DNA of 64,000 bases from Podarcis muralis (GCF_964188315.1 NC_135660.1:28892001-28956000); one strand, 5' to 3'; shown: positions 1-63,915, counted from the stretch's first letter. The notes: generated by a model from the letters alone, not told the origin. Program-made: numbers and translations.

Positions 1-954
1 TATATCAGGATTACTACCATAGAAGTTTGAACATACAGAATCAATTATTAGCCTTTTAAGGCAGTAGGTTTAGGTTTGGTTCCTCCAACAGACTTCTGAT
101 CTCTAGTCTGATAAGACAGTTACACAAACAAGAGAGTGTCCAGACACAAGTAAGTTAAAAAAATGTAATTTATAAGAAAATAACACTTCTTTTGGTGTGA
201 AAAGGAAACAAAAAATGAATAAATACCTGGCTCATATGAAATGAGGTCTTACAACTTAAATTGTATAAAAATAATATTTGCACAGCCACCTCCAATTAAC
301 TGGTGGATTGACAACAAACAAAGACTCTGTATTTTTTTGAAAGAGTCTCTCTCCCATGCAGCAGATCTTAAGAAAAGATTTTTTTCCAGTTTCTGTCCAG
401 AGCTAGTATATGACTTGCCTTTCAATGTAGGTTTTTCTTATCACAATAATCTGAGCAATTGCAGATAGGACTCAGCTGAGATGAATGTCAATAAAAGAAG
501 CATTTTCATCTAGCTCCCCCTCAATATTAGTGGACCCTGAATTTTTAGTTTATTAAGGCCATTTTGGGATTTGTGTTTAAAACATTTCAAACTCTCAGTT
601 GCGTTCAAAAAGAACAAAAACTCTCCCACTGAAAGCAAGAGGATTTAAACAATCAACTTTGTCTAGAGTATGCAGCTATGTTTGTAGCACTGTTGCCCTT
701 CTGTTCTTGGATTTCCAATGAGAGTGAGACTGACATTTTAAGTCACTGTTCAGTTGTTTCACTCTTGACCAAAGAAATAAGACAACTAAGCTCCATGAAA
801 TGTGAAGTTTGGAAATGTCATTCGCAAATAGCAAAAGCAAAAAAAAAGAGTTAATTTTATTTCATGTAATTTAAGCAAACCAAAACCAATTAACTAGGAA
901 ATGAAAGGGAAGTGAAAAGCAGTAAACTGGGCAGAATCAGTGATGGCCAATCAC

Positions 955-1113
955 CTGCGATTTTCATCCAGCACATCCAAGACTTGCTGGTAAGCCCTAC
1001 GGGTAGAAGACTGGATAAGCGACAATATGCCCCGAGCAGAGTAAAGATTAGATCCATCTTCAGAGAACATTTGGGGTGGACAGACACGAACCTGTTGAGG
1101 TGATGGTGTCACA
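955..1113 (-). CDS. MFF: MFF coding exon (159 nt, phase 2-2; cassette exon in mammals)
   Basis: aaacag|T GTG ACA... VTPSPQQVRVCPPQMFSEDGSNLYSARGILSLIQSSTRRAYQQVLDVLDENR AG|gtgatt. Confidence 0.96.
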
Positions 1114-4100
1114 CTGTTTGTGCAAGTGTAGCAAATGAAGAGAGAAACACTAGTGTCAGGTTTTCAGACAGGAAAAAAAATCATCCATCAACCAACCCTT
1201 TTTGAAAAATTAAAAGCTGACCCCCATTTTTTCTTCTTCCTTCCCCATCAACAGATTAAAAACCACATCAAGGAAATGTTAGTGGGTATCTTGTGAACTG
1301 ACTCTTGGAACCCTTTATATGAGGCAAAATATCAAGGATAATGGCTTTGATTCATTGTGATCAAAGAATACTAAAAACCAGAGCCATGATAATAAGCAGG
1401 TCTGTATTAAAAACACAGGACACAACAGCACTCTTTAGCAGATAGTAAAGACAGATTTGGATTCACTGTATGCCAGAATCATACAATGCAGATCACAGCC
1501 TCAAATATATCCAAGTTACTCAGAGACTGGAGGAGAGTATGTTGAAAACGTTCTGAAAAACAGAAGCCTATATAAAACAAGAGTGACATAAACATAATAG
1601 TTTGATTGTTTTTTGCAAATACAGGGCTATGTGAAAAACATGCAAATATAGGACTACAAAAGAAACATGCAAGATAGCAAAAACACTGGTTAAGGCTTCT
1701 TATATCCCAAATATTCCGATAAGCAAAAATTTCTTTTAGCACTTATCATGAAAGCAAGAGGCTGAGGATTAACCAAAAAAAATTGCATCAAAAGCACTCA
1801 TTGTCTATAAGACAAATGAAAGTGCAATTCAGCACCATCTATATAAATGGGAATTTTGCAATTCACTTCAACAGGATATTGATTAAACTTTTATTTTTCA
1901 AAGGTCAATTCTCAGAGAGCTATTGATCCCAACAAGATTTCAGAAAACTACGCATATGAAGAGGCAAGAGAAGTACTAAGCAAAATCTTCAAAGCTTGTA
2001 GTATTGACCTTTTTTGTTTTTGTTTAAAAAGAAACATTTCTCCCTTTCCACATTAAGATTGTTCTTTAATTTTGAGGTTTAACTACATTAATCAAGATTT
2101 TACCGTTTAGTCTGAACTCTGCCTTACGAAGAGCAGGAAGAGAAGCATTAGGGGTATAGCATTTTAAGTCCTTCTGAATAATCAGTTAATGACACAATCT
2201 GGGTGCAAGCCAACAAGCACTTTTGTTTCAAGCAACATTTTAAATAATTATTTTGAAATGAACCTGATGAACTAAGAGGGTACTCTGTGGAATCCATCAA
2301 GGGATTGAAAGGCAGTCATGCCTATCCTCCGTTTAAGAACAAAACAATTATATATAAAATACAATTTTAAAAAATCCTTATTGAATGTTAGAAAGAGAAA
2401 AATACAGAGCTTGTGGAAAGAGAAAAGAAAAAGCAGTACTGATAACCTGGAAATAAAAACGTTTGGGCCTCAAAAAAAACCAACCATACACATGTAGTGT
2501 CCCCATATAATAGTCTGCCAAGCCTGCTGTACAGTACGTATATATTCTATAGAAATAGCTCTGATGAATACACTCAATGCACCTTTAAAAATGACTATAT
2601 ATAGGTTATATATTGTAATTATATCCTCACACACAACCCTATATTCTTGCAGGGAGGCTATGTCTGTTGTGCTTCAAATGGACAATAATTACTTATGTTT
2701 GCACAACCAACAAATAAGAAAAGCTATTCTCACAATCCTGAATGTATTTAAATAAAACGAAACCTCAAAGAGTTTTCAGTGGAACTTGCTTTCAAGGAAG
2801 TCTCATTAGAACTGCAAACCTCTTGTACCTTGTTACTTGGGCAACAGTAAAATGCAGATTTTTTGATATGAAGTTCTGCAAGTAAACCAAAAACAACTAT
2901 TCTAGCAAACACAAGGCTGCAAATTAATATTGTTCTATGATCCTAGTGTTTTACAAAAAAAATTTAAAAAAATGAGAGAACAGGTCCCTGTCTCAGCAAG
3001 CTTACTACTTAAAATGGAACATTGGGTTTCTTACTGTGAATAGGACCTCAGGTTGATAAGTGAGTCGGCCATGAAACGTGATTTGTCCAAAATACGGCCA
3101 TGTGACTAACTGATTTAACTGGCTTAGGCTTCTGAGAACCTAGACAGAACAGTAGACAAACAAAATATGACTAGGGAATCAGGATGCCATACTGAACCTG
3201 ACACAGAGAAAAGGGGGATTTGCTGTGATTAACCTGAGTGGCCTGGGATGCAGAGCGTTCTCATGACTGGCTCACTTATCCACTTGAGAGGAAATATACC
3301 TAACAATATATTTTTCAGCTAATATAAGCTGAAATTTATTTTATTCTTTGCTATCTTCACATACCAGAAAACCAACTATGGTGGTCAAGACCTGCTGCTG
3401 GGACTGATTCTATGACTGAAGAGGAAATCCTCTACACCAGAGCTTTTCAACCTTTCTGAGTTCACGGCTCCCTTAACCAACTACATTCTTTCTGTGGCAC
3501 CCCTGTGGGGCTCCGAAGCCCAGTTATGTGACCCCTTGCCTGCAGAACTGGCAGCCTCTCACCCTTTTTCGAACACCCTCCCCTGTGGAGTGTTCCCTCA
3601 ACCTCCTCTCCTTGGGAGTTCTCTGGACTGCTGCTGCTGTGGTCCCTGGTCTTTGACCTGCCCCACCCCAAAGAGAGGTGCCTCCCAGAGGCACCATTTG
3701 CCCGCAGAGCCTATAGCCAGGGCTGCTGCAATAAAACAGCTGTGCAAGCCTTTGGGAGGCAGAGACGTGAGAGGGCATCAGAGGAAGAAGGGAAAGAGAC
3801 AGAGGCCAGTGTTGCCCAAGGGCACCTCTGACCATCATTCAAGGCATCCCAGGGTGCCACGGCACTCTGGTTGAAAACCACTGCTCTAAACCTTACCAAG
3901 GTGGAGAGCCAATTGAATTCAATGGAACTTCTTCAGAATGTATAGGATTTGACTACAAATAGGTTCATTGAAAGAAAAAAACCTGACTGATTCATCCACC
4001 ATCTGCTCATGAACTACATTTACTGCTTTTATTGCCACAAAAACCGTCTTCAGGGACTCTGTGTAAGGCTGGTTGTGTATATAATGTCTGAGAAATGTGG

Positions 4101-7100
4101 TGCTAAAAACCCAAGTCAAAGCTAAGATACACTCAAAAAGCTATACAACAGACTTATATAATAATCAAACCATCACTTCATTCAGTTCAGTATTGTCTAC
4201 ACCTGGAAGCATCTGTCCAGGATTCGAGACTGGAATCTTTCCTAACACTACCTTGAGAGGATAGGAGCTGAAATGGGACCTTCTGCATGCAAAGAATGCA
4301 CTCTGGTGAGCTTTCCCCAGGTTGTGTGATAAAATGTATATTAGGGATCAAACTCTTATTTACAAATTTGGGGGTGAAACTATTTACAAAATGGCAAAGG
4401 GGAAATAACAGACAACATTCATAATGACATCGCAAGTAATATAAACCCATAAATAATTGTGGGAAATTCAGGAACATGTACAAAATCATATTCAGCTTAA
4501 AATCTGACAACAGTTTCTCATTAGCTATGATATGCAGTCACTTTCTCTAGCAAGTTGAAGCAAGAAGCTTCAAGACTAGCACAATAAAAGAAGGGTTTAT
4601 TAAAAATTCTATGTCTCTCCCCTTCCTTTATTCCCTGTATCAAGTTAGTGATCTAAGAAGCCTCAGCTTTTAAGTATCAATAGGGAGAGACAGAGGAACA
4701 ATAACTTAAAGAAGGCCAATTTCCCTACAGTATTTATAGAACTTATAATATTGCTTATACCAGTGCTTTTTTCTAAAAAAAATGTTTAAGGGTACTCTCA
4801 TTTTCCTATTCATACTGAAATACTGCCACTCAATGAGGCCAAACTTAGATTCACAAAATGTTTAGGGGTATGCATACCCCCAGAAAAAAACACACTGGCT
4901 AAGCCACTTATGTAGAAAGAATATATTTGCAAATAGAAGTTATGCATTGTCATATTTTTCCACCCTGATTATGGTACCTATCTGGCCTCTGGGCCCACCT
5001 GATATCCTTGCACTGGCCTAAAATTTGCATGCATAAAACCCAAAGTGCATAGGTCTGAACAGTGCAGTCAATCCACAAACCAACCACATGGTTCAGCTGA
5101 TATGTGTTGGATTTTGCACACACATATCTCTACTACGCTCATGTAGGATTAGTATGCCAGAAACATGCAACCTTGTCCTCTCCAGCAACCACTGTTTATC
5201 CCTAAAATTTGTTCTCAAATTTTATAGTTAAAAACTAAGCAAAAATATGCTTCCAAATTCATTACAAGAATGACAAATTTTCATATTCCGTTAATTTGTG
5301 TCTTAATTACAGGTGGAACCAAGCATACAGAATATTTTTAAAAAATCAAATCAGACAATATAGACAAGTCTCTTAGATGGCAATGCATTAAGTACACACT
5401 TGACATATTTAAAAGTGAATGGTTATAATTAGTGGTCAAGCTTACATTTCATCTTTAGCTGTGAAGGGTGACTGGTACCTTGGCATTTTAACTCTCAGGA
5501 CAGTTTCAAGATTGTGCTACCACTAATCACAGTTGTTAATATCTTAAAGAGGGAGCAACTTTCTAAATAATTGGAAGGTCATTAAGGCAATCATCATTAC
5601 TGGTTATCACTTCTTGTGCCTAGTTATTACTAGTCCTCAAAAGCATTTGAGAATCTGTGTATGCTCAAAAGGTTATCAGGAAAGCCACTACATACAGTTG
5701 TATGGCAAGTGCAGAAATGACAACATATATTGTTCCAAGAAGGCAGATGAGGAAAAGGAACCAAGCCAATTCCTCTTCTAGACATGGTAAGGTTTGGCAC
5801 AGAATTTTCTCATTGTTGCAACAAACATACTAGAATGCCATGTCACAGTTCCTATACTAGAATGTGGAAGCTACCCTGTGCAATTGCACTTGCCATGCAT
5901 GGCGCTCAGTGCCAACTACTAACATGCATATGCACCCTCCAAAAGAAAGAAAAACATGTGTTTGCCAAAATGCTGCACAACAGCACTTGAAAGGATAACT
6001 ATTTATACACTGTTAGCTTCTTTGGCAACAATTTCTTTTTTTGTGGAAAAACAGGAAACAAATTGAAAATGAAAACTGGAGGCAACAGCCTGGAAACTCA
6101 GAACTGAGAAGGCAATGCTATCAGTATACCACATCAAGCAACACCCTTAATTCAGTCCATGTAAAACTCACCACTGCAGCACTAGAATATCATCCTACCC
6201 TTTTCAAATGCAAGTGGGATTGGCAAAAGTACTGCGATGGCTGCAGATAGATTCAGGAAAGGTCATATACCTTAGCTTGACACTTGGAGGACATAGTTTA
6301 TATCCAACGACCACTTACCCTTTGAATGAGTCATCACAGCACCAACCTCACAAAAAGGCCTCACAACACCAGCTCCAACAGTGACCTACAGATAGCTAGA
6401 AACCCTTCTGTGAGACCTTGAACTCCCAGTCACCCTTGTGATAGCATATAACTTCAACTACAGAGGAGACAAGGAGTTGTTGTTCTAGCTGTTTCCATCT
6501 CCCCACTTTCCTCTCCTGCCAACAGGGGACAAGCAGGAAAACAGTAGTGGAAAGTGATTTCTTTCTTCAGGCTCATAGCTGGAAGCAAAATGAAGTGTTT
6601 ACCTCACTACAAGAATCTTAATTAAAAGATACTGATCACCCCATAGTCTTAATGAATCAGCATTTATAAGTTTGTAATAAAGACCCACTCTGTCCTTTGC
6701 ATGGCATAAACAAAGACGATGTAATTAATTCTAAGCATGCAGGCAGCAGAAGATTCAAGTAGATCCAATAACAATATGAAATACTTCCCTTCACACAAAT
6801 CCACTACAAATGTATTTTAGAAACAAACTTTCTTTATCCTATAAAGAGAGTTCTGGATCCAGACTAGGTTAGTGACACTTTAAAAGTAAAGGTAAAGGGA
6901 CCCCTGACCATTAGGTCCAGTCGTGACCGACTCTGGGGTTGCGGCGCTCATCTTGCTCTATAGGCCGAGGGAGCTGGCGTACAGCTTCCGGGTCATGTGG
7001 CCAGCATGACTAAGCCGCTTCTGGTGAACCAGAGCAGCGCACAGAAGCACCATTTACCTTCCTGCTGGAGCGGTACCTATTTAACTACTTGCACTTTGAC

Positions 7101-10100
7101 GTGCTTTCGAACTGCTAGGTGGGCAGGAGCTGGGACCAAACAACAGGAGCTCATGCCGTCACGGGAATTCGAACCATCGACCTTCTGATCGGCAAGTCCT
7201 AGGCTCTGTGGTTTAACCCACAGCGCCACCCACGTCCCTATATACATATATACTGGGGGGGGGGGATACCAAATGCTGCTATATGAAGACATTTAGCAAA
7301 TGCTGTTTTATGCAGCTGAAAAAATGTTTTGAGAACAATCACACAAAATTTACTTCATTAATAGTTAGTTATTATTCCAACAAAAAGAACAAAAAATATT
7401 TGGAAAGTCAGTTGTAGCTGTGTAAGATTAAGTAACTTCTCTTTATAAAGAAGATAATCAGTTGAAAGGCATATCCTAAGCATGAACTGGTACGGAACAC
7501 ATGAAGAAGCTTTTTCTACAAATGTTGCATGCGCCAATAACCCCTCTACTCACATTGACTCATTTCTCATCAATTGACCATTTTGACGATTTGCGTTTTC
7601 ACTCATGGAGCGTTCTCTTTTCAGTCTCCCAACTGAGCGAACCTGTAAAACAAAGCGGGGGGGAGGGATACGTCTTTCACCACTGCTATGGCATCAGTAT
7701 CCAGCTTTACCTAATATCAACAACTGAACCATTTTCATTTTTAGTAAAGCAGAAAATGAATAAAAACAGTATTCCTGGATGGTGACATTTTTCCTGATAT
7801 TTTGGAAAGTAAGGAGAACAAAGACTCCCCTCTCTTGCATGTCCCCCATTTTTAAAATGAGAAAAATTTGTCAAAAATAATTTAAGTTTACCAACAGCTT
7901 TTGAAATTAAGTTTGGTTTAAGACAGAAATAGAGAACCATTGGGTCTCTAGACATTGTAGGACTCCCAGCTCTCATCAGCCCCAGCAAGCACAGAACATC
8001 AGGAAAGATGGGAACTGTAGTCCAAGAACATATACAGCCCTTCCACTAAAATTCTTATGCCAGTTTACACAATAATAAAATACAAATGATTAAAATGCAA
8101 ATCCAAATTATCATAAAAACCTGAAGACCAAAAGGCATTAAGTCTTATAAGTTAGATAAAAACAATCAAGATAGCCCAAATTATGTCTAAGCAGCCTGGT
8201 ACCAAAAATACAACCAAGTAAACACCACATAAAAAAGTGCTCTGGGGGTATCTTTGCTTTCAACAGGGAGTATTAAAATAATATACTGTGTTCTACAAAG
8301 CAGTAACCTATTTTATAGTACTGATCTGAAATGGAGTATAAAGCAATAAATATTTGACTTCTCTTTTGACTTATTAAATATAATATTGAAACAAAACATG
8401 ATGAAATGAAAGGCATAAAGAATACTAGCCTCTTCATTTTGAGGAGTCTGAGTAGGGGCTCGCTCTAAGTCCAGGAAATCTAGTGGTCGTTCACTGAGTG
8501 AAATAACACGGGGAGGTGTTTTCAGTGACAGAGACTTGAATGGAGTTGACTGGAGAAGATCTAGATCTGGCGGCCTGGAGAGTGGAATGTCTTCACTATT
8601 ACCTGTAAGTTAATATTAAGATCAAGAACATTTTACTAACCAATTATTCAAAATGGCTCAATGGGTAGACTGCTGGAGCTGGGTAAAATCAAGCTCAAAT
8701 CCCATATGAAGTATGAATTCACTAGGTGGTCTTAAGCAAATCACACTCAAGTTCATATGTAAAAATAAATTGAATGGGTGTGAAGTCTGACAGCATGCTG
8801 CTTTATCACTTCTGTCCACCTGAAGGCAAACGTACCTGCCACTACAATCCGCTCTGGAACCTGCATTGTTACACTGGCATTTGGAATCCCCCCTTCATGA
8901 GCACTGTGTTCAAGGTCAGCATTTGGTGGAGCAACCTTGAGCTTTTCCGGAACTCTCATTCTCTGATTGATCCCTTCAGTATACTCCATTTCATATTGAA
9001 TTCGATTCATTTCTGCCATTTCGGCAGCCGGAGATGGGAAAGCTGTCGTGCTCATCCTAATATGAGATAAAACAACCTGAATTACCCCTCAGTAGTAAAA
9101 AGAAACACAACATGGGTTTTGATCCACAGTAAATTGAAGTCTTCCACTGTTGGTAGAGAATGTGTTTTAAGTCTATGTAACAGTGGATGTGCAGCACAGC
9201 CATTGTGTATAAGATGCCCCCTATGATTTAACATTGGAATTAAAATTTGCATACACCTGCTTTACTGCTTGCTCCATGTGAGTAGAGAAACAAGCCACAT
9301 AGCCAGTTATCCACAGCTTCTGGTTTTGATGCAATGCTAATAAACATAATTAATTAATGGCTTTCAAACAAACCATAATATAAACCAAGGTTTAAAGTTG
9401 GCTTCCGTATCTTGGCTTGTTTGGAAGCCATTAACCATAGTTCCCAGTTCAGATGCAAAAGGAAGCTAGAGTTAACCATAGCTTCGTGTGTGAAGGGCAA
9501 AGCAAAGTGAGAGCACAGGAGCTGCATGTGGGTGCATGAAACTTTTACATATCTTTGCACCAAGATATCAAAGCCTTATTAAACAGAAATTTGTTTGTGC
9601 AAATGTGGCCAATTTATGCCAACCCAGGGTAACCATATTGGAGGCAGAAGGTAAAGAGACCAATTTCACAAATATTAAGCATACAGGGTGCAAAGAGAGC
9701 CTGCAAGTGAGCAAGTCTCACATTCTGACCTACATTTCAAAAAATGAGGGTTCTGTATCTCTCTTCCCCCAACTTCACCCCACACCTTAGATTCTTGCTT
9801 CAAGATTCATGAAGCATCTACAACCATCTAAATTAAATAGTACTAATTATTCCAAATGAGTGCCTAGCTCTGGGCAATTTATTTTAAAGACATCTCTTTC
9901 TAACAGGCAAGAACAGGGGTGATTAACCTCTCCTCCTTAACTGCTATGCACATACAAGTAAAGGAGAAGGGGCTATGTGCCTGACTGCCTGTGTCCTTTG
10001 CTGTGTGGGAGAACAGTGTGCAGGAGACTGTGGAATGGCCACACTCTTTTGGCCATACCCAACTTTAGAATGTGGCTCCCAGAAGGGCAGCCAAGGGTGA

Positions 10101-10739
10101 AAGTGGCCCTTGGGCCAAAAAAGCTTAGCCACCACTGGCCAAGAACAAAGCATACTTTTGAAGATCCCAGTGTTCTGATGGAAGACAACGCAGGCCGTAT
10201 CAGCATTCTCCATTCTCAAATAATGAGACTTCCCCAAAGCCATTCAAACAAAATTAACAGTTCCAACCTGTATGCATTTTAAATTCACCAATATAGATTC
10301 ATATTAAGGATTCCTTAACATTTAAGGCAGAGACAGCCAACACAGAGCCCTCCAGGTGTTGTGGGACTCCAACTTCCAGACCATTGCCCATGTTGGCTGA
10401 GGCCAATGAGATGCAGCCCCACAAAACACCAAAATTCCACTTGTCTGCTTGCAAGTATAGGCTCTAACTACCAAATGTTTACCTATGCTGCAAACTGAAG
10501 AATACATTTCTATTGTTTCTTTCACTATCCAAATTTCTGTGAAAAGGAGGCAAGGCCCTATCTTTCCCTCAAGTAAGGGAACACATTAGGCTAGATAACA
10601 GTTTTTTAAATATTGCAATCAACAGAGATAAAAATACCTACAAGAGTCAATCTTCTATCTGCTTCTACAAGCACAAGTTCAACTCTACAGCTTTCACTAA
10701 CCTTCCTACAGGAATGTCACTGCTTGATCGCTTGCTCAT
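955..10739 (-). CDS. MFF: Mitochondrial fission factor, multi-exon CDS, 3'-partial: join(10739-10702, 9056-8836, 8602-8430, 7642-7554, 1113-955); continues beyond the left edge
   Basis: Spliced translation MSKRSSSDIPVGRMSTTAFPSPAAEMAEMNRIQYEMEYTEGINQRMRVPEKLKVAPP...LKRERSMSENANRQNGQLMRNESIVTPSPQQVRVCPP...RRAYQQVLDVLDENRR is collinear with human MFF as recalled. Position downstream of COL4A3 matches known synteny. Confidence 0.97.
3438..3883. mobile_element. hAT-type MITE
   Basis: TIRs CAGAGCTTTTCAACC / GGTTGAAAACCACTG; 8-bp TSD CTCTACAC / CTCTAAAC (7/8 match). Confidence 0.8.
4761..4897. mobile_element. Short MITE remnant, probably hAT
   Basis: Imperfect TIRs CAGTGCTTTTTTCT / AGAAAAAAACACACTG; internal palindrome GGGGTATGCATACCCC at 4865-4880; TSD poorly conserved. 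Confidence 0.55.
5446..5520 (-). pseudogene. MFF: Degenerate homolog of the 75-nt MFF cassette exon (pseudo-exon or poison exon)
   Basis: G TAG CAC AAT CTT GAA ACT GTC CTG AGA GTT AAA ATG CCA AGG TAC CAG TCA CCC TTC ACA GCT AAA GAT GAA AT|gtaagc, i.e. *HNLETVLRVKMPRYQSPFTAKDE versus recalled human WHRSDSAPRNKISRFQAPISAPEY. Donor is intact, there is no AG at the homologous acceptor, and W is replaced by a stop. Confidence 0.75.
6883..7238 (-). mobile_element. Sauria SINE, full length
   Basis: tRNA-like head GGGACGTGGGTGGCGCTGTGGGTTAAACC...GGTTCGAATTCC; Bov-B-related 3' end ...GGGGTCCCTTTACCTTTAC; homologous to four other copies in the window. Confidence 0.92.
7554..7642 (-). CDS. MFF: MFF coding exon (89 nt) carrying the RERSMS motif
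   Basis: ttacag|VRSVGRLKRERSMSENANRQNGQLMRNES AT|gtgagt. Confidence 0.96.
8430..8602 (-). CDS. MFF: MFF coding exon (173 nt) ending in a GC donor
   Basis: ttacag|GT NSEDIPLSRPPDLDLLQSTPFKSLSLKTPPRVISLSERPLDFLDLERAPTQTPQNEE|gctagt. Confidence 0.93.
8836..9056 (-). CDS. MFF: MFF coding exon (221 nt) with N-terminal Drp1-recruiting repeats
   Basis: attag|G MSTTAFPSPAAEMAEMNRIQYEMEYTEGINQRMRVPEKLKVAPPNADLEHSAHEGGIPNASVTMQVPERIVVA G|gtacgt. Confidence 0.97.
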
Positions 10740-11975: not shown

Positions 11976-12240
11976 CGCACCAAAGACATGGTTTGCAATG
12001 TTTAACGGCCTGAGGGCAAGGAGTGTAACAGGTTCATAAGGCAAACTCTGTGGTAACAGTTAAGGAGAGCCCAGGGCAGGATCGGAGCAGAGGTCTACCC
12101 AATTCAGCACCCATTCCCTCAGCGTGGCAAGCTGGGTGCTTTGACAAGAACCTTCAGCACAAAGCACGTAATATATAGCATGTAAAGGTCCCTTGAGAAT
12201 AGAAATTACAGCCATAACTGAACCGAGAGGTGGGGAAAGG

Positions 12241-12396
12241 CATAGTTGTCAACCTTCCCTTTTTTTGCAGGAAATTCCCTTATTCCAGCGCCTTTCCCCC
12301 GCTGCTATCCCGGATTGTTAGATATCCCGTAGACTGTCCCCGGGACAGGTGAGGCTGCTGATCCCTTATTTTCAAATCTGAAAGTTGACAGCTATG
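12241..12396. mobile_element. hAT-type MITE at the edge of the MFF CpG island
   Basis: TIRs CATAGTTGTCAAC / GTTGACAGCTATG; 8-bp TSD GGGAAAGG / GGGGAAGG. Confidence 0.75.
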
Positions 12397-12499
12397 GGGG
12401 AAGGGTGGTCGTGGGGGGGGGGGGGAGAGACTCTGGTCAAAAACCGAGAAAAGCGCAGTAAGCCAATGGGATTAATGGTTATTTTGGGGGGGGAGGGGG

Positions 12500-13420
12500 G
12501 ATTTGGCATGACTGTAACAAAGGCCTCAGCGACGGGGGTAGACGCGAGGAATAACGGCAACGGCAGGGGAGGCGGGCTGAGGCAACGATTTGATAGGAAC
12601 CTGTGTGGGCTGAGGGACCGTTATTTATGAGGAAGAGGGTTCAAAGATGGGGCGGGAATAACCCCCCCCCCTTCCCGCCAATGCTGAGGGAACCAGGCGC
12701 AACGGCGGTTGGACTCGGGCATCTGGTCGGTGGTAGGAGGTGTGTGTGCTAATTTCGCAGCTTCCTCCCCATTCCCGCGCCCCCCCCCCCGGCTCCTTCT
12801 GAGGGGAAGGGAAGGCCCAGACCAGCACTCTCTCCGGTTCTCACCCTGAGGCCAACGGGGAGGCGGCTTCTTGGGTCCCGGGTATCCACTCCGACCGCTT
12901 TGGTCTCGGTTCCTCTCTCTCTCTCTCAGGGGCCGTTAGCCAAAGGGCATCCAAGCAGCCCCTCGCCTACACAGCCCTGGAACAGAAGCAACGAAACGAA
13001 ACAAAAAAAAAAAACCGACCCCGATTGGCCCCACAGAGTTGCCGTAACCGGCGGGGGAAAGAATGAGCCGTGACACCTCACGTGACGGGAAAAGGGGTGG
13101 GGAGGAAAAAAAAGGTAGCCGGCAGGGGCTGAAGGTGCAGGGGCCATCTTTACTGTGGTCACGATGCTGCTTCGGGGGAAGCGAGTACCGTACTGTGGAT
13201 TCAATTCCCTGCTGCTCATGGCGATGCAGCGTGGTTTAGGTGATGAGACCCATGTGCTGTAAGAGAGTAGAGCTCAGCCCCTTATATAAGTGTGGGGGAT
13301 TTGGCTCATACGTGATGCTCAGCTTCAGTTTGCTGCGGAATTTGCAGATAGGTTTTTTGATACACTGGCGGCTGTGGGCGGCGAAGACCTAGATATTCGG
13401 GGAAAGGAGCTTAATATCCT
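12500..13420. promoter_or_regulatory. CpG island and MFF promoter
   Basis: High GC and CpG against an AT-rich background; GC box GGGCGG near 12650; CCAAT (minus) 13024-13028; E-box TCACGTGAC 13078-13086; YY1-like AAGATGGCC (minus) 13142-13150; palindromic CTTATATAAG 13281-13290. Confidence 0.8.
12845..12990 (-). other. MFF: Probable non-coding MFF exon 1 (5' boundary approximate)
   Basis: Donor GGCCTCAGG|gtgaga at 12845/12844 inside the CpG island, upstream of exon 2. Confidence 0.55.
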
Positions 13421-13459
13421 GCTAAGGTTTTGTAGATCCGCCCCACTTGCTTTCCAAGT

Positions 13460-13509
<50 letters not shown>
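13460..13509. repeat. (AGAT)n microsatellite forming the Bov-B tail
   Basis: About 12 AGAT units abutting the LINE 3' end. Confidence 0.95.
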
Positions 13510-13511
13510 TA

Positions 13512-14014
13512 CAGTTGTTTAGTCGTGTCCGACTCTTCATGACCCCATGGACCAGAGCACGCCAGGCACTCCTGTCTTCCACTGCCTCCCGCAGTTTGAT
13601 CAAACTCATGCTGGTAGCTTCAAGAACACCATCCAACCATCTCATCCTCTGTCGTCCCCTTCTCCTTGTGCCCTCCATCTTCCCCAACATCAGGGTCTTT
13701 TCCATGGAGTCTTCTCTTCTCATGAGGTGGCCAAAGTATTGGAGCCTCAGCTTCAGGATCTGTCCTTCCAGTGAGCACTCAGGGCTGATTTCCTTAAGAA
13801 TTGATAGGTTTGATCTTCTTGCAGTCCATGGGACTCTCAAGAGTCTCCTCCAGCACCATAATTCAAAAGCATCAATTCTTCGGCGATCAGCCTTCTTTAT
13901 GGTCCAGCTCTCACTTCCATACATCACTATTGGGAAAACCATAGCTTTAACTATATGGACCTTTGTTGGCAAGATGCTGTCTAGGTTTGTCATTGCTTTT
14001 CTCCCAAGAAGCAG
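13512..14014 (-). mobile_element. Bov-B (RTE clade) LINE, 5'-truncated 3' fragment
   Basis: Open frame LLLGRKAMTNLDSILPTKVHIVKAMVFPIVMYGSESWTIKKADRRRIDAFELWCWRRLLRVPWTARRSN...SRTRLN, the characteristic Bov-B ORF C-terminus. Confidence 0.95.

Positions 14015-18369: not shown

Positions 18370-63915
<45,546 letters not shown>

What the first reader, a model, noticed from the sequence alone, without database searches (positions are those of the whole stretch)
5440..5530. The 75-nt MFF cassette exon appears dead or converted to a poison exon
Seen: between the 89-nt and 159-nt MFF exons lies a 75-nt, phase 2-2 segment with an intact donor (AT|GTAAGC). It translates *HNLETVLRVKMPRYQSPFTAKDE. The first codon is TAG, and the bases before the homologous start are TG rather than AG. 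The two nearby AGs (gattag| giving 77 nt, tggtag| giving 71 nt) both shift frame into TGA within 9 codons. Known (from memory): human MFF has an alternative 75-nt exon here, WHRSDSAPRNKISRFQAPISAPEY, directly after an AMPK-site serine (RNDS; here RNES). Inference: this lineage either lost the isoform or uses the exon for NMD-coupled regulation. Skipping it leaves an in-frame protein (NES-I-VTPSP).
Basis: partly seen in the sequence, partly recalled or inferred. Interest (0 to 1): 0.75.

Follow-up and report, generated by a model that had tools for sequence, protein, structure and literature searches.

The report
Disabled MFF cassette exon, wall lizard
In this wall-lizard genome a small optional exon of the mitochondrial fission gene MFF carries a young stop codon and can no longer add its 25 amino acids, but its missing AG splice signal is an old change shared by all lizards and snakes examined, so this is ordinary exon decay with one open question about splicing.

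Summary
On the minus strand, the 75-nt homologue of the amniote MFF cassette exon (5520-5446) lies between the 89-nt exon (7642-7554) and the 159-nt exon (1113-955). It starts G|TAG, is preceded by TG instead of AG, and keeps a GTAAGC donor.

Comparison with 11 other loci changes the dating. The T at acceptor position -2 is present in every squamate where the site exists: gecko, skink, Rhineura, Lacerta, two Podarcis and snakes. Bird and turtle have AG, so the acceptor change is old.

The TAG is young and private. Podarcis raffonei, Lacerta agilis and Rhineura keep TGG. The window lineage has four private substitutions in 79 nt. One of them also destroys an in-frame CAG acceptor 9 nt downstream.

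Other lineages broke the exon independently: a 1-nt deletion in Lacerta, stops in skink and snakes, indels in gecko.

Only one annotated squamate protein contains the exon, P. raffonei isoform X6, and it needs a GT-TG intron.

Every acceptor near the exon's 5' end in this genome gives a premature stop. Only a hypothetical internal 48-nt version stays open. Whether the remnant is silent or used as a poison exon needs RNA data.

The parts
7554..7642 (-). MFF 89-nt exon (...RLKRERSMSEN...RNES, ends in phase 2 with AT); donor gtgagt follows at 7553
   Evidence: Pfam Miff; 100% match to P0169 exon by exon
5446..5520 (-). 75-nt homologue of the amniote MFF cassette exon, phase 2-2, now with an in-frame stop
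5517..5519 (-). TAG at the ancestral Trp codon. The derived base is A at 5518 (TGG in P. raffonei, L. agilis, Rhineura, bird, turtle). It also creates an AG acceptor for a 71-nt frameshifting exon.
5521..5522 (-). TG at the position of the ancestral AG acceptor; T at -2 is shared by all squamates sampled
5523..5524 (-). New AG (private A-to-G at 5523) giving a 77-nt frameshifting exon
5511..5513 (-). AAT codon. The private G-to-A at 5512 destroys the in-frame CAG acceptor (66-nt version) kept in P. raffonei, Rhineura, bird and turtle. L. agilis lost the same G independently (to C).
5440..5446 (-). Exon end and donor T|GTAAGC. The last exon base, T at 5446, is a private C-to-T at a CpG. The GTAAG core is conserved in all squamates sampled except the snakes.
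5543..5559 (-). Conserved polypyrimidine stretch ending in AAG, 22 nt upstream of the TG site. It is a possible acceptor for a 97-nt exon with TAA at codon 3 (5538-5536).
5446..5493 (-). Hypothetical 48-nt in-frame open version using the internal AG at 5495-5494 (I-V-KMPRYQSPFTAKDE)
   Evidence: no annotated protein carries it
5495..5497 (-). TGA reached by both the 77-nt and the 71-nt versions
5296..5740 (-). Conserved block around the exon (about 220 nt upstream to 150 nt downstream), alignable across squamates and partly to bird and turtle
955..1113 (-). MFF 159-nt exon (VTPSPQQVRVCPP...DENR)
   Evidence: (Pfam Miff E = 3e-16)

Best explanation
This is the remnant of the ancestral amniote MFF 75-nt cassette exon. 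In this Podarcis genome it can no longer be included productively.

Shown: squamates as a group carry TG where bird and turtle carry the AG acceptor.

Inferred: after that change the exon could be spliced in only through neighbouring sites. Candidates are an in-frame CAG 9 nt downstream, or rarely the TG itself.

Shown: on the branch leading to this species four substitutions fell within 79 nt.
- One turned the Trp codon into TAG.
- One destroyed the +9 CAG.
- Two of these changes (the TAG itself and the change at 5523) created out-of-frame TAG acceptors.
- One changed the last exon base.

Shown: the 75-nt frame and the 97-, 77- and 71-nt versions all meet a stop within 10 codons, far upstream of the last exon junction.

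Inferred: the gene therefore makes only the exon-skipped proteins, the annotated 318- and 305-residue isoforms. Any stray inclusion would be removed by nonsense-mediated decay.

Shown: independent breaks of the same exon in Lacerta, skink, snakes and gecko, a substitution pattern without codon bias, and its absence from the isoforms retrieved for 15 of 16 RefSeq-annotated squamates. Together these point to relaxed selection on the coding function across squamates.
For: - Sequence and frames.
- The window is identical to assembly GCA_964188315.1, and its exons match P. muralis MFF X1.
- P. raffonei differs at exactly four sites in and beside the exon, and all four are derived in the window.
- L. 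agilis has a 1-nt deletion leading to TGA, and has lost the same CAG.
- Skink has TAG plus TGA. Snakes have two stops and a lost donor. Gecko has indels.
- Bird and turtle have CAAG|G, while all squamates have T at -2.
- The X1 isoforms retrieved from squamate RefSeq annotations are 315-326 residues and lack the exon.
- A search with the lizard exon region found only P0166.
- By my own count from the alignment, about 8 non-synonymous versus 2-3 synonymous changes occurred in Lacertoidea, which is the neutral ratio.
- In human cases, AG-to-TG acceptor mutations activate neighbouring AGs rather than splicing at the TG (PMC2374985).
Against: - The exon and its flanks are more conserved than the surrounding intron. 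P. raffonei versus Rhineura is 90.7% in the exon against 73% background. The block has 1 substitution on the raffonei branch against 6.8 expected.
- On the window branch, the flanks of the conserved block, away from the 79-nt exon zone, carry no private substitution. My estimate of the expectation is about 4.9, from the rates.
- These points suggest some function persists, at least at the RNA level.
- Rhineura and P. raffonei still have the exact 75-nt open frame.
- RefSeq models an exon-containing isoform in P. raffonei.
- A 48-nt in-frame version remains open in the window.
- No transcript data could be examined. No second individual or assembly of this species was available.
Confidence: 0.6

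Rival explanations
1. The segment is a regulated poison exon. It is still recognised through the conserved upstream polypyrimidine-AAG (97 nt) or the new TAG acceptors (77 or 71 nt) together with the conserved GTAAGC donor. Its inclusion lowers MFF output through nonsense-mediated decay.
For: - All these versions carry early stops.
- The donor and the upstream acceptor-like signals are conserved in nearly all squamates, even where the reading frame is broken, as in skink and gecko.
- Conservation is at nucleotide level without a codon pattern.
- The flanks of the block carry no private substitution on the window branch, while the exon's 5' end gained two canonical AGs.
Against: - There is no transcript evidence.
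- Polypyrimidine content before the new AGs is poor, 0.44-0.50.
- Snakes lost the donor.
- Within lacertids the block does not evolve significantly more slowly than the intron, except on the raffonei branch.
- Several other 100-nt windows in the same intron are equally conserved.
Confidence: 0.2
2. The exon survives as a shorter productive exon. The internal AG at 5495-5494 gives a 48-nt in-frame insert of 16 residues. In that case the TAG and the other 5' changes lie in what is now intron.
For: - The 48-nt version is open in the window, P. raffonei, L. agilis, Rhineura, Pogona and gecko.
- All lacertid lesions lie upstream of it.
- By my count from the alignment, this 3' part differs at only 2 of 48 positions between Pogona and Rhineura.
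Against: - No protein with such a 16-residue insert was found in the word-indexed search, which scored only proteins of 189-600 residues. That search should have picked up shared 5-mers.
- The AG is simply part of the ancestral Arg codon, so its presence is not evidence of use.
- Skink and snakes lack it.
Confidence: 0.1
3. The stop is an assembly error or a private or polymorphic allele of the sequenced animal, and the species still has the P. raffonei-like open exon.
For: Only one assembly of this species could be read, because L002 is the window's own assembly. Four changes clustered in 79 nt are somewhat unusual. Only 2.8% of 79-nt windows reach four by the strict count, which scores three at this exon; the fourth was assigned with Rhineura as outgroup.
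Against: All four differences are clean substitutions, not homopolymer indels. One is a CpG transition. The surrounding 400 nt match the relatives perfectly in register.
Confidence: 0.07

Closest known systems
Amniote MFF 75-nt alternative exon (insert MWHRSD... after the ...RNDS AMPK-site region), as annotated in birds, turtles and platypus
   Same: It has the same position between the 89- and 159-nt exons, the same length and phase, the same GTAAG donor, and 13 of 24 residues identical to the bird exon.
   Different: Here there is no AG acceptor, an in-frame TAG, and a faster-changing N-terminal third. It is not annotated in this species.
TG-AG tandem 3' splice sites of U2 introns (Szafranski et al. 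2007, PMC2374985)
   Same: TG sits at the intron end with AGs within 28 nt: an AAG 22 nt upstream, and in P. raffonei and Rhineura a CAG 9 nt downstream. The TG and its flanks are conserved across a whole order. The P. raffonei X6 model needs a GT-TG intron.
   Different: No transcript evidence could be seen here. In this window, use of the TG would still meet the TAG.
Poison (NMD-coupled) cassette exons, as in SR-protein genes (general knowledge)
   Same: Inclusion introduces an early stop. The exon and its flanks are conserved at nucleotide level without a codon signature.
   Different: Conservation is modest, not ultraconserved. Inclusion is unproven, the acceptors are weak, and snakes have lost the donor.
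Lineage-specific death of an alternative exon (pseudo-exon formation)
   Same: There are independent disabling mutations in several related lineages, a neutral non-synonymous to synonymous ratio, and absence from annotated transcripts.
   Different: Decay is slower than in the surrounding intron, and two lineages still have a perfect open frame.

Membership tests
MFF gene (Pfam Miff, PF05644) | Flanking exons match the Miff profile and the species' annotated MFF protein | tested here: met
   E = 3e-16 and 1e-3; exon-by-exon tblastn identity to P0169
Amniote MFF 75-nt cassette exon | Syntenic position, 75 nt, phase 2-2, sequence homology | tested here: met
Amniote MFF 75-nt cassette exon | Canonical AG acceptor at the exon start | tested here: not met
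   TG at 5522-5521; bird and turtle have AG
Amniote MFF 75-nt cassette exon | Open reading frame across the exon | tested here: not met
   TAG at 5519-5517
Amniote MFF 75-nt cassette exon | GT donor | tested here: met
   T|GTAAGC at 5446-5440
Poison exon (NMD-coupled) | Inclusion puts a stop more than 50-55 nt upstream of the last exon junction | tested here: met
   Stops at 5538-5536, 5519-5517 or 5497-5495. The 159-nt exon lies downstream, and the gene call in L002 extends about 12.7 kb further.
Poison exon (NMD-coupled) | The exon is actually included in transcripts, and more so when NMD is blocked | not testable with these tools
   No RNA data could be reached. Exact look-up of the predicted truncated products found nothing, which is uninformative.
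Poison exon (NMD-coupled) | Nucleotide-level conservation of exon and flanks above the intron background | tested here: inconclusive
   It is clear for Rhineura versus Podarcis (0.87-0.91 against 0.73-0.75). It is only at the 95th percentile of windows in the intron, and is not significant within lacertids except on the raffonei branch.
TG-AG tandem 3' splice site | TG at the intron end with an AG partner within 28 nt | tested here: met
   AAG lies 22 nt upstream. In the window there are also AGs 2 nt upstream and 4 nt downstream.
TG-AG tandem 3' splice site | Transcripts spliced at the TG | not testable with these tools
   Only the RefSeq model XP_053246063.1 of P. raffonei implies it. Its supporting evidence could not be inspected.
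Decaying pseudo-exon | Independent disabling lesions in relatives and no codon-aware constraint | tested here: met
   The roughly 8: 2-3 non-synonymous to synonymous count is my own, from the alignment, and has low power.

The most novel reading that the evidence does not exclude
Squamates have kept this MFF exon alive for over 200 million years without its AG. They would do so by splicing at a conserved non-canonical TG, in tandem with nearby AGs. The P. raffonei isoform X6 model and the exact 75-nt open frames of Rhineura and P. raffonei hint at this. The wall lizard then switched the exon from coding to unproductive by gaining a stop and two canonical out-of-frame AGs while losing the in-frame CAG.
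Probability: 0.15. Interest if true: 0.6.

Novelty: new member of a known kind. Interest (0 to 1): 0.35.

Why it matters
MFF is the main DRP1 receptor for mitochondrial and peroxisomal fission. The insert lies in its disordered linker, just after an AMPK target serine (PMC7404275). Mouse isoforms without the optional inserts bind Drp1 more strongly in a two-hybrid assay (PMC4666140).

A whole reptile order that has weakened or dropped one insert, with a species-level knockout here, is a natural experiment on whether that isoform matters. The practical lesson is about dating: the 'acceptor lesion' is squamate-wide, and only the stop is young.

If the P. raffonei model rests on real transcripts, the locus would be a rare conserved TG 3' splice site and worth a minigene test. 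Otherwise this is ordinary turnover of an alternative exon.

Tried and rejected
- **Second copy of the exon in the window:** none found (blastn and tblastn).
- **Pfam on the 23-residue piece:** no hit, because the Miff profile skips this insert.
- **Rfam on 4800-6200:** nothing, so the conserved block is not a known intronic RNA gene.
- **RNA structure:** the 201-nt fold has z = -0.6. The six-species consensus fold has -2.9 kcal/mol and no compensatory pairs. I dropped a conserved structure as an explanation.
- **Search with the lizard exon region of P0166:** it returned only P0166. The search depends on shared words and on length, so diverged or truncated products could be missed.
- **Exact look-up of the truncated products expected from TG-spliced inclusion** (P0166:1-174 and 14-174): not in the collection, which is uninformative.
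- **Look-ups of X2 isoforms** (P0168, P0170): failed, because only the longest product per gene is indexed.
- **Clustering of the four private substitutions:** nominal only. 2.8% of 79-nt windows reach four by the strict count (which scores three at this exon), and one of the four is a CpG site. I do not claim positive selection.
- **Long ORFs elsewhere in the window:** no Pfam hits.
- **Gekko X1 extra residues:** they lie before the 89-nt exon, not at this exon.

Full report
**1. What is in the window**

The gene on the minus strand of 1-10,739 is MFF.
- Coding exons lie at about 10739-10701, 9058-8834, 8609-8430, 7642-7554 and 1113-955.
- They match the annotated Podarcis muralis isoform X1 (P0169) exon by exon.
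- The two exons flanking the finding hit Pfam Miff.
- The window is 100% identical over 11,739 bases to contig OZ076959.1 of assembly GCA_964188315.1, on which that protein is called.
- Earlier notes of this scan also call the genome a wall lizard.
- I compared exons one at a time by reference.

**2. The observation**

- The 89-nt exon ends in phase 2 (..TCA AT).
- The 75-nt segment 5520-5446 reads G TAG CAC AAT ... GAA AT, followed by GTAAGC.
- The two preceding bases are TG.
- The AGs at 5524-5523 and 5518-5517 give 77- and 71-nt versions. Both reach TGA at 5497-5495.
- Skipping gives NES-I-VTPSP, as in P0169.
- There are no N runs and there is no second copy of the exon.

**3. Homology**

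A profile-free search with the 159-nt exon found vertebrate MFF proteins. A bird isoform (P0010) carries the insert MWHRSDTVPRNKMPRFQSPLSTKDC at the same junction, and 13 of 24 residues match the window. Turtle (P0191) and platypus (P0201) isoforms have it too. The exon is therefore ancestral to amniotes (an inference from three lineages).

**4. Comparative DNA**

I fetched the MFF locus of:
- P. raffonei (L001), Lacerta agilis (L003), Rhineura floridana (L004) and Pogona vitticeps (L005);
- three snake assemblies that carry the Pantherophis-type protein (L006-L008);
- the gecko Paroedura picta (L009), the sparrow Zonotrichia (L010), the turtle Macrochelys (L011) and the skink Tiliqua (L012).

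The alignments are.

*(a) Acceptor.* Bird and turtle have CAAG|G.

| Lineage | Sequence at the ancestral acceptor |
|---|---|
| Gecko, skink | CATG\|G |
| Rhineura, Lacerta, P. raffonei | AATG\|G |
| Window | AGTG\|G |
| Snakes | GTG\|A |
| Pogona | site deleted |

The AG-to-TG change is thus squamate-wide and old. Polarity rests on the exon being used with this boundary in bird, turtle and platypus proteins. I could not fetch a mammalian locus.

*(b) Reading frame.*
- Rhineura and P. raffonei keep an exact 75-nt open frame.
- The window has TAG.
- L. agilis has a 1-nt deletion that leads to TGA.
- Skink has TAG and TGA.
- Snakes have two stops and have lost the donor.
- Gecko has indels.

*(c) Private changes.* The window differs from P. 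raffonei at four sites within 79 nt. With Lacerta and Rhineura as outgroups, all four are derived in the window.
- 5523 A-to-G creates a TAG acceptor.
- 5518 G-to-A creates the stop and another TAG acceptor.
- 5512 G-to-A.
- 5446 C-to-T, a CpG site and the last exon base.

The raffonei branch has none.

*(d) The +9 CAG.* The change at 5512 destroys a CAG 9 nt inside the exon. In P. raffonei, Rhineura, bird and turtle that CAG would give a 66-nt in-frame open exon. L. agilis mutated the same G independently.

**5. Annotation evidence**

The longest isoforms retrieved for Rhineura, Hemicordylus, Pogona, Sceloporus, two Anolis, Zootoca, Paroedura, Gekko, Elgaria, Tiliqua, Python, Candoia, Pantherophis and P. 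muralis are 315-326 residues and lack the insert.

The single exception is P. raffonei isoform X6 (P0166, XP_053246063.1, 343 residues), which reads ..NES-MWHSLETV... Mapped on L001, this needs an intron ending in TG. A search with that region found no other protein. No 340-residue CAG-spliced version sits in its cluster.

Whether X6 rests on transcripts or on alignment of foreign proteins cannot be seen here. An in-frame canonical CAG lies 9 nt away and is not the one modelled. That makes a protein-guided model at least as likely (my inference).

**6. Constraint**

| Comparison | Exon | Upstream 100 nt | Downstream 100 nt | Intron background |
|---|---|---|---|---|
| P. raffonei vs Rhineura | 90.7% | 85.7% | 77.8% | 72.7% |

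- Against Pogona, snake, gecko, turtle and bird, the exon block is one of only two to six alignable islands in the intron.
- The exon window is only at the 95th percentile of 100-nt windows, and several other islands are equally conserved.
- By my count from the alignment, substitutions in Lacertoidea are about 8 non-synonymous against 2-3 synonymous, with no third-position excess. That is the neutral ratio, though power is low.
- Branch counts in the -220 to +150 block: raffonei has 1 observed against 6.8 expected (P = 0.009). The window has 3 by the strict count against 5.95 expected, all in the 79-nt exon zone, and none in the flanks of the block.

So something in the block has been under nucleotide-level constraint, while the coding content has not. 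This fits either a slowly dying regulated exon or a non-coding splicing role.

**7. Mechanism in this genome**

Possible acceptors:

| Acceptor | Exon length | Outcome |
|---|---|---|
| Polypyrimidine-AAG at 5559-5543 | 97 nt | TAA at codon 3 |
| TAG at 5525-5523 | 77 nt | TGA at 5497-5495 |
| TG at 5522-5521 | 75 nt | TAG at 5519-5517 |
| TAG at 5519-5517 | 71 nt | TGA at 5497-5495 |
| GAG at 5496-5494 | 48 nt | in frame, open |

Apart from the unannotated 48-nt version, every one of these gives a premature stop well upstream of later junctions. Any such transcript should therefore be an NMD target (established rule; inference here).

Published work shows that TG acts only as an alternative to an AG within 28 nt. 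It also shows that AG-to-TG mutations activate neighbouring AGs (PMC2374985). This suggests how the exon could have persisted in squamates, through the +9 CAG, and why losing that CAG matters here.

**8. Verdict**

The coding isoform is lost in this species, and the loss is recent. It sits on top of an ancient squamate-wide weakening of the acceptor and repeated independent decay elsewhere. Silent relic (most likely) cannot be separated from functional poison exon without RNA data. This is a new example of a known kind of event, with moderate to low interest. The possible conserved TG splice site is the only unusual angle.

**9. Negative results**

- Rfam found nothing.
- No significant or covarying RNA structure.
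- No exact match for the predicted truncated products.
- No Pfam domains in the other long ORFs of the window.

Noticed in passing
window 8424-8430 (minus strand): The MFF exon ending at 8430 (..CAA AAT GAA GAG) is followed by GCTAGT. The intron before the 89-nt exon therefore appears to be a GC-AG intron.
   Followed up: no
L011:11084-11166 (Macrochelys suwanniensis): The turtle keeps the AG acceptor and an open 75-nt frame, but the donor reads AT instead of GT (CAC|ATAAGC). Its annotated protein (P0215) lacks the insert. This may be an independent loss outside squamates.
   Followed up: partly
L005:13121-13204 (Pogona) and L009, the about 102 nt ending at the GTAATC donor (Paroedura): Pogona has a canonical AG (..AAAATAG|) giving an 84-nt in-frame open version. 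The gecko has the conserved TTTAAG| acceptor giving a 102-nt in-frame open version. Neither is annotated, and both could be chance.
   Followed up: partly
window 5519-5530 with 5425-5436 (minus strand): A 12-bp helix can form between the acceptor zone and the sequence just after the donor, looping out the whole exon. The private A-to-G at 5523 turns a central A-C mismatch into G-C. The fold is not significant (z = -0.6) and shows no covariation.
   Followed up: yes
window 19745-20102 and 6885-7242: A dispersed repeat of about 360 nt, roughly 89% identical, is present both in the MFF intron and about 13 kb upstream. It is also present in P. raffonei.
   Followed up: no
window 12001-14000: A GC-rich stretch (0.52 against about 0.40 elsewhere) lies just upstream of the first MFF coding exons. 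It is probably the CpG-island promoter.
   Followed up: no
L006-L008 and L012, at the homologue of window 5517-5519: The same Trp codon became TAG independently in snakes and in the skink, and TGA in the gecko. This is expected for neutral G-to-A change at TGG over long times, but it also creates an AG each time.
   Followed up: partly
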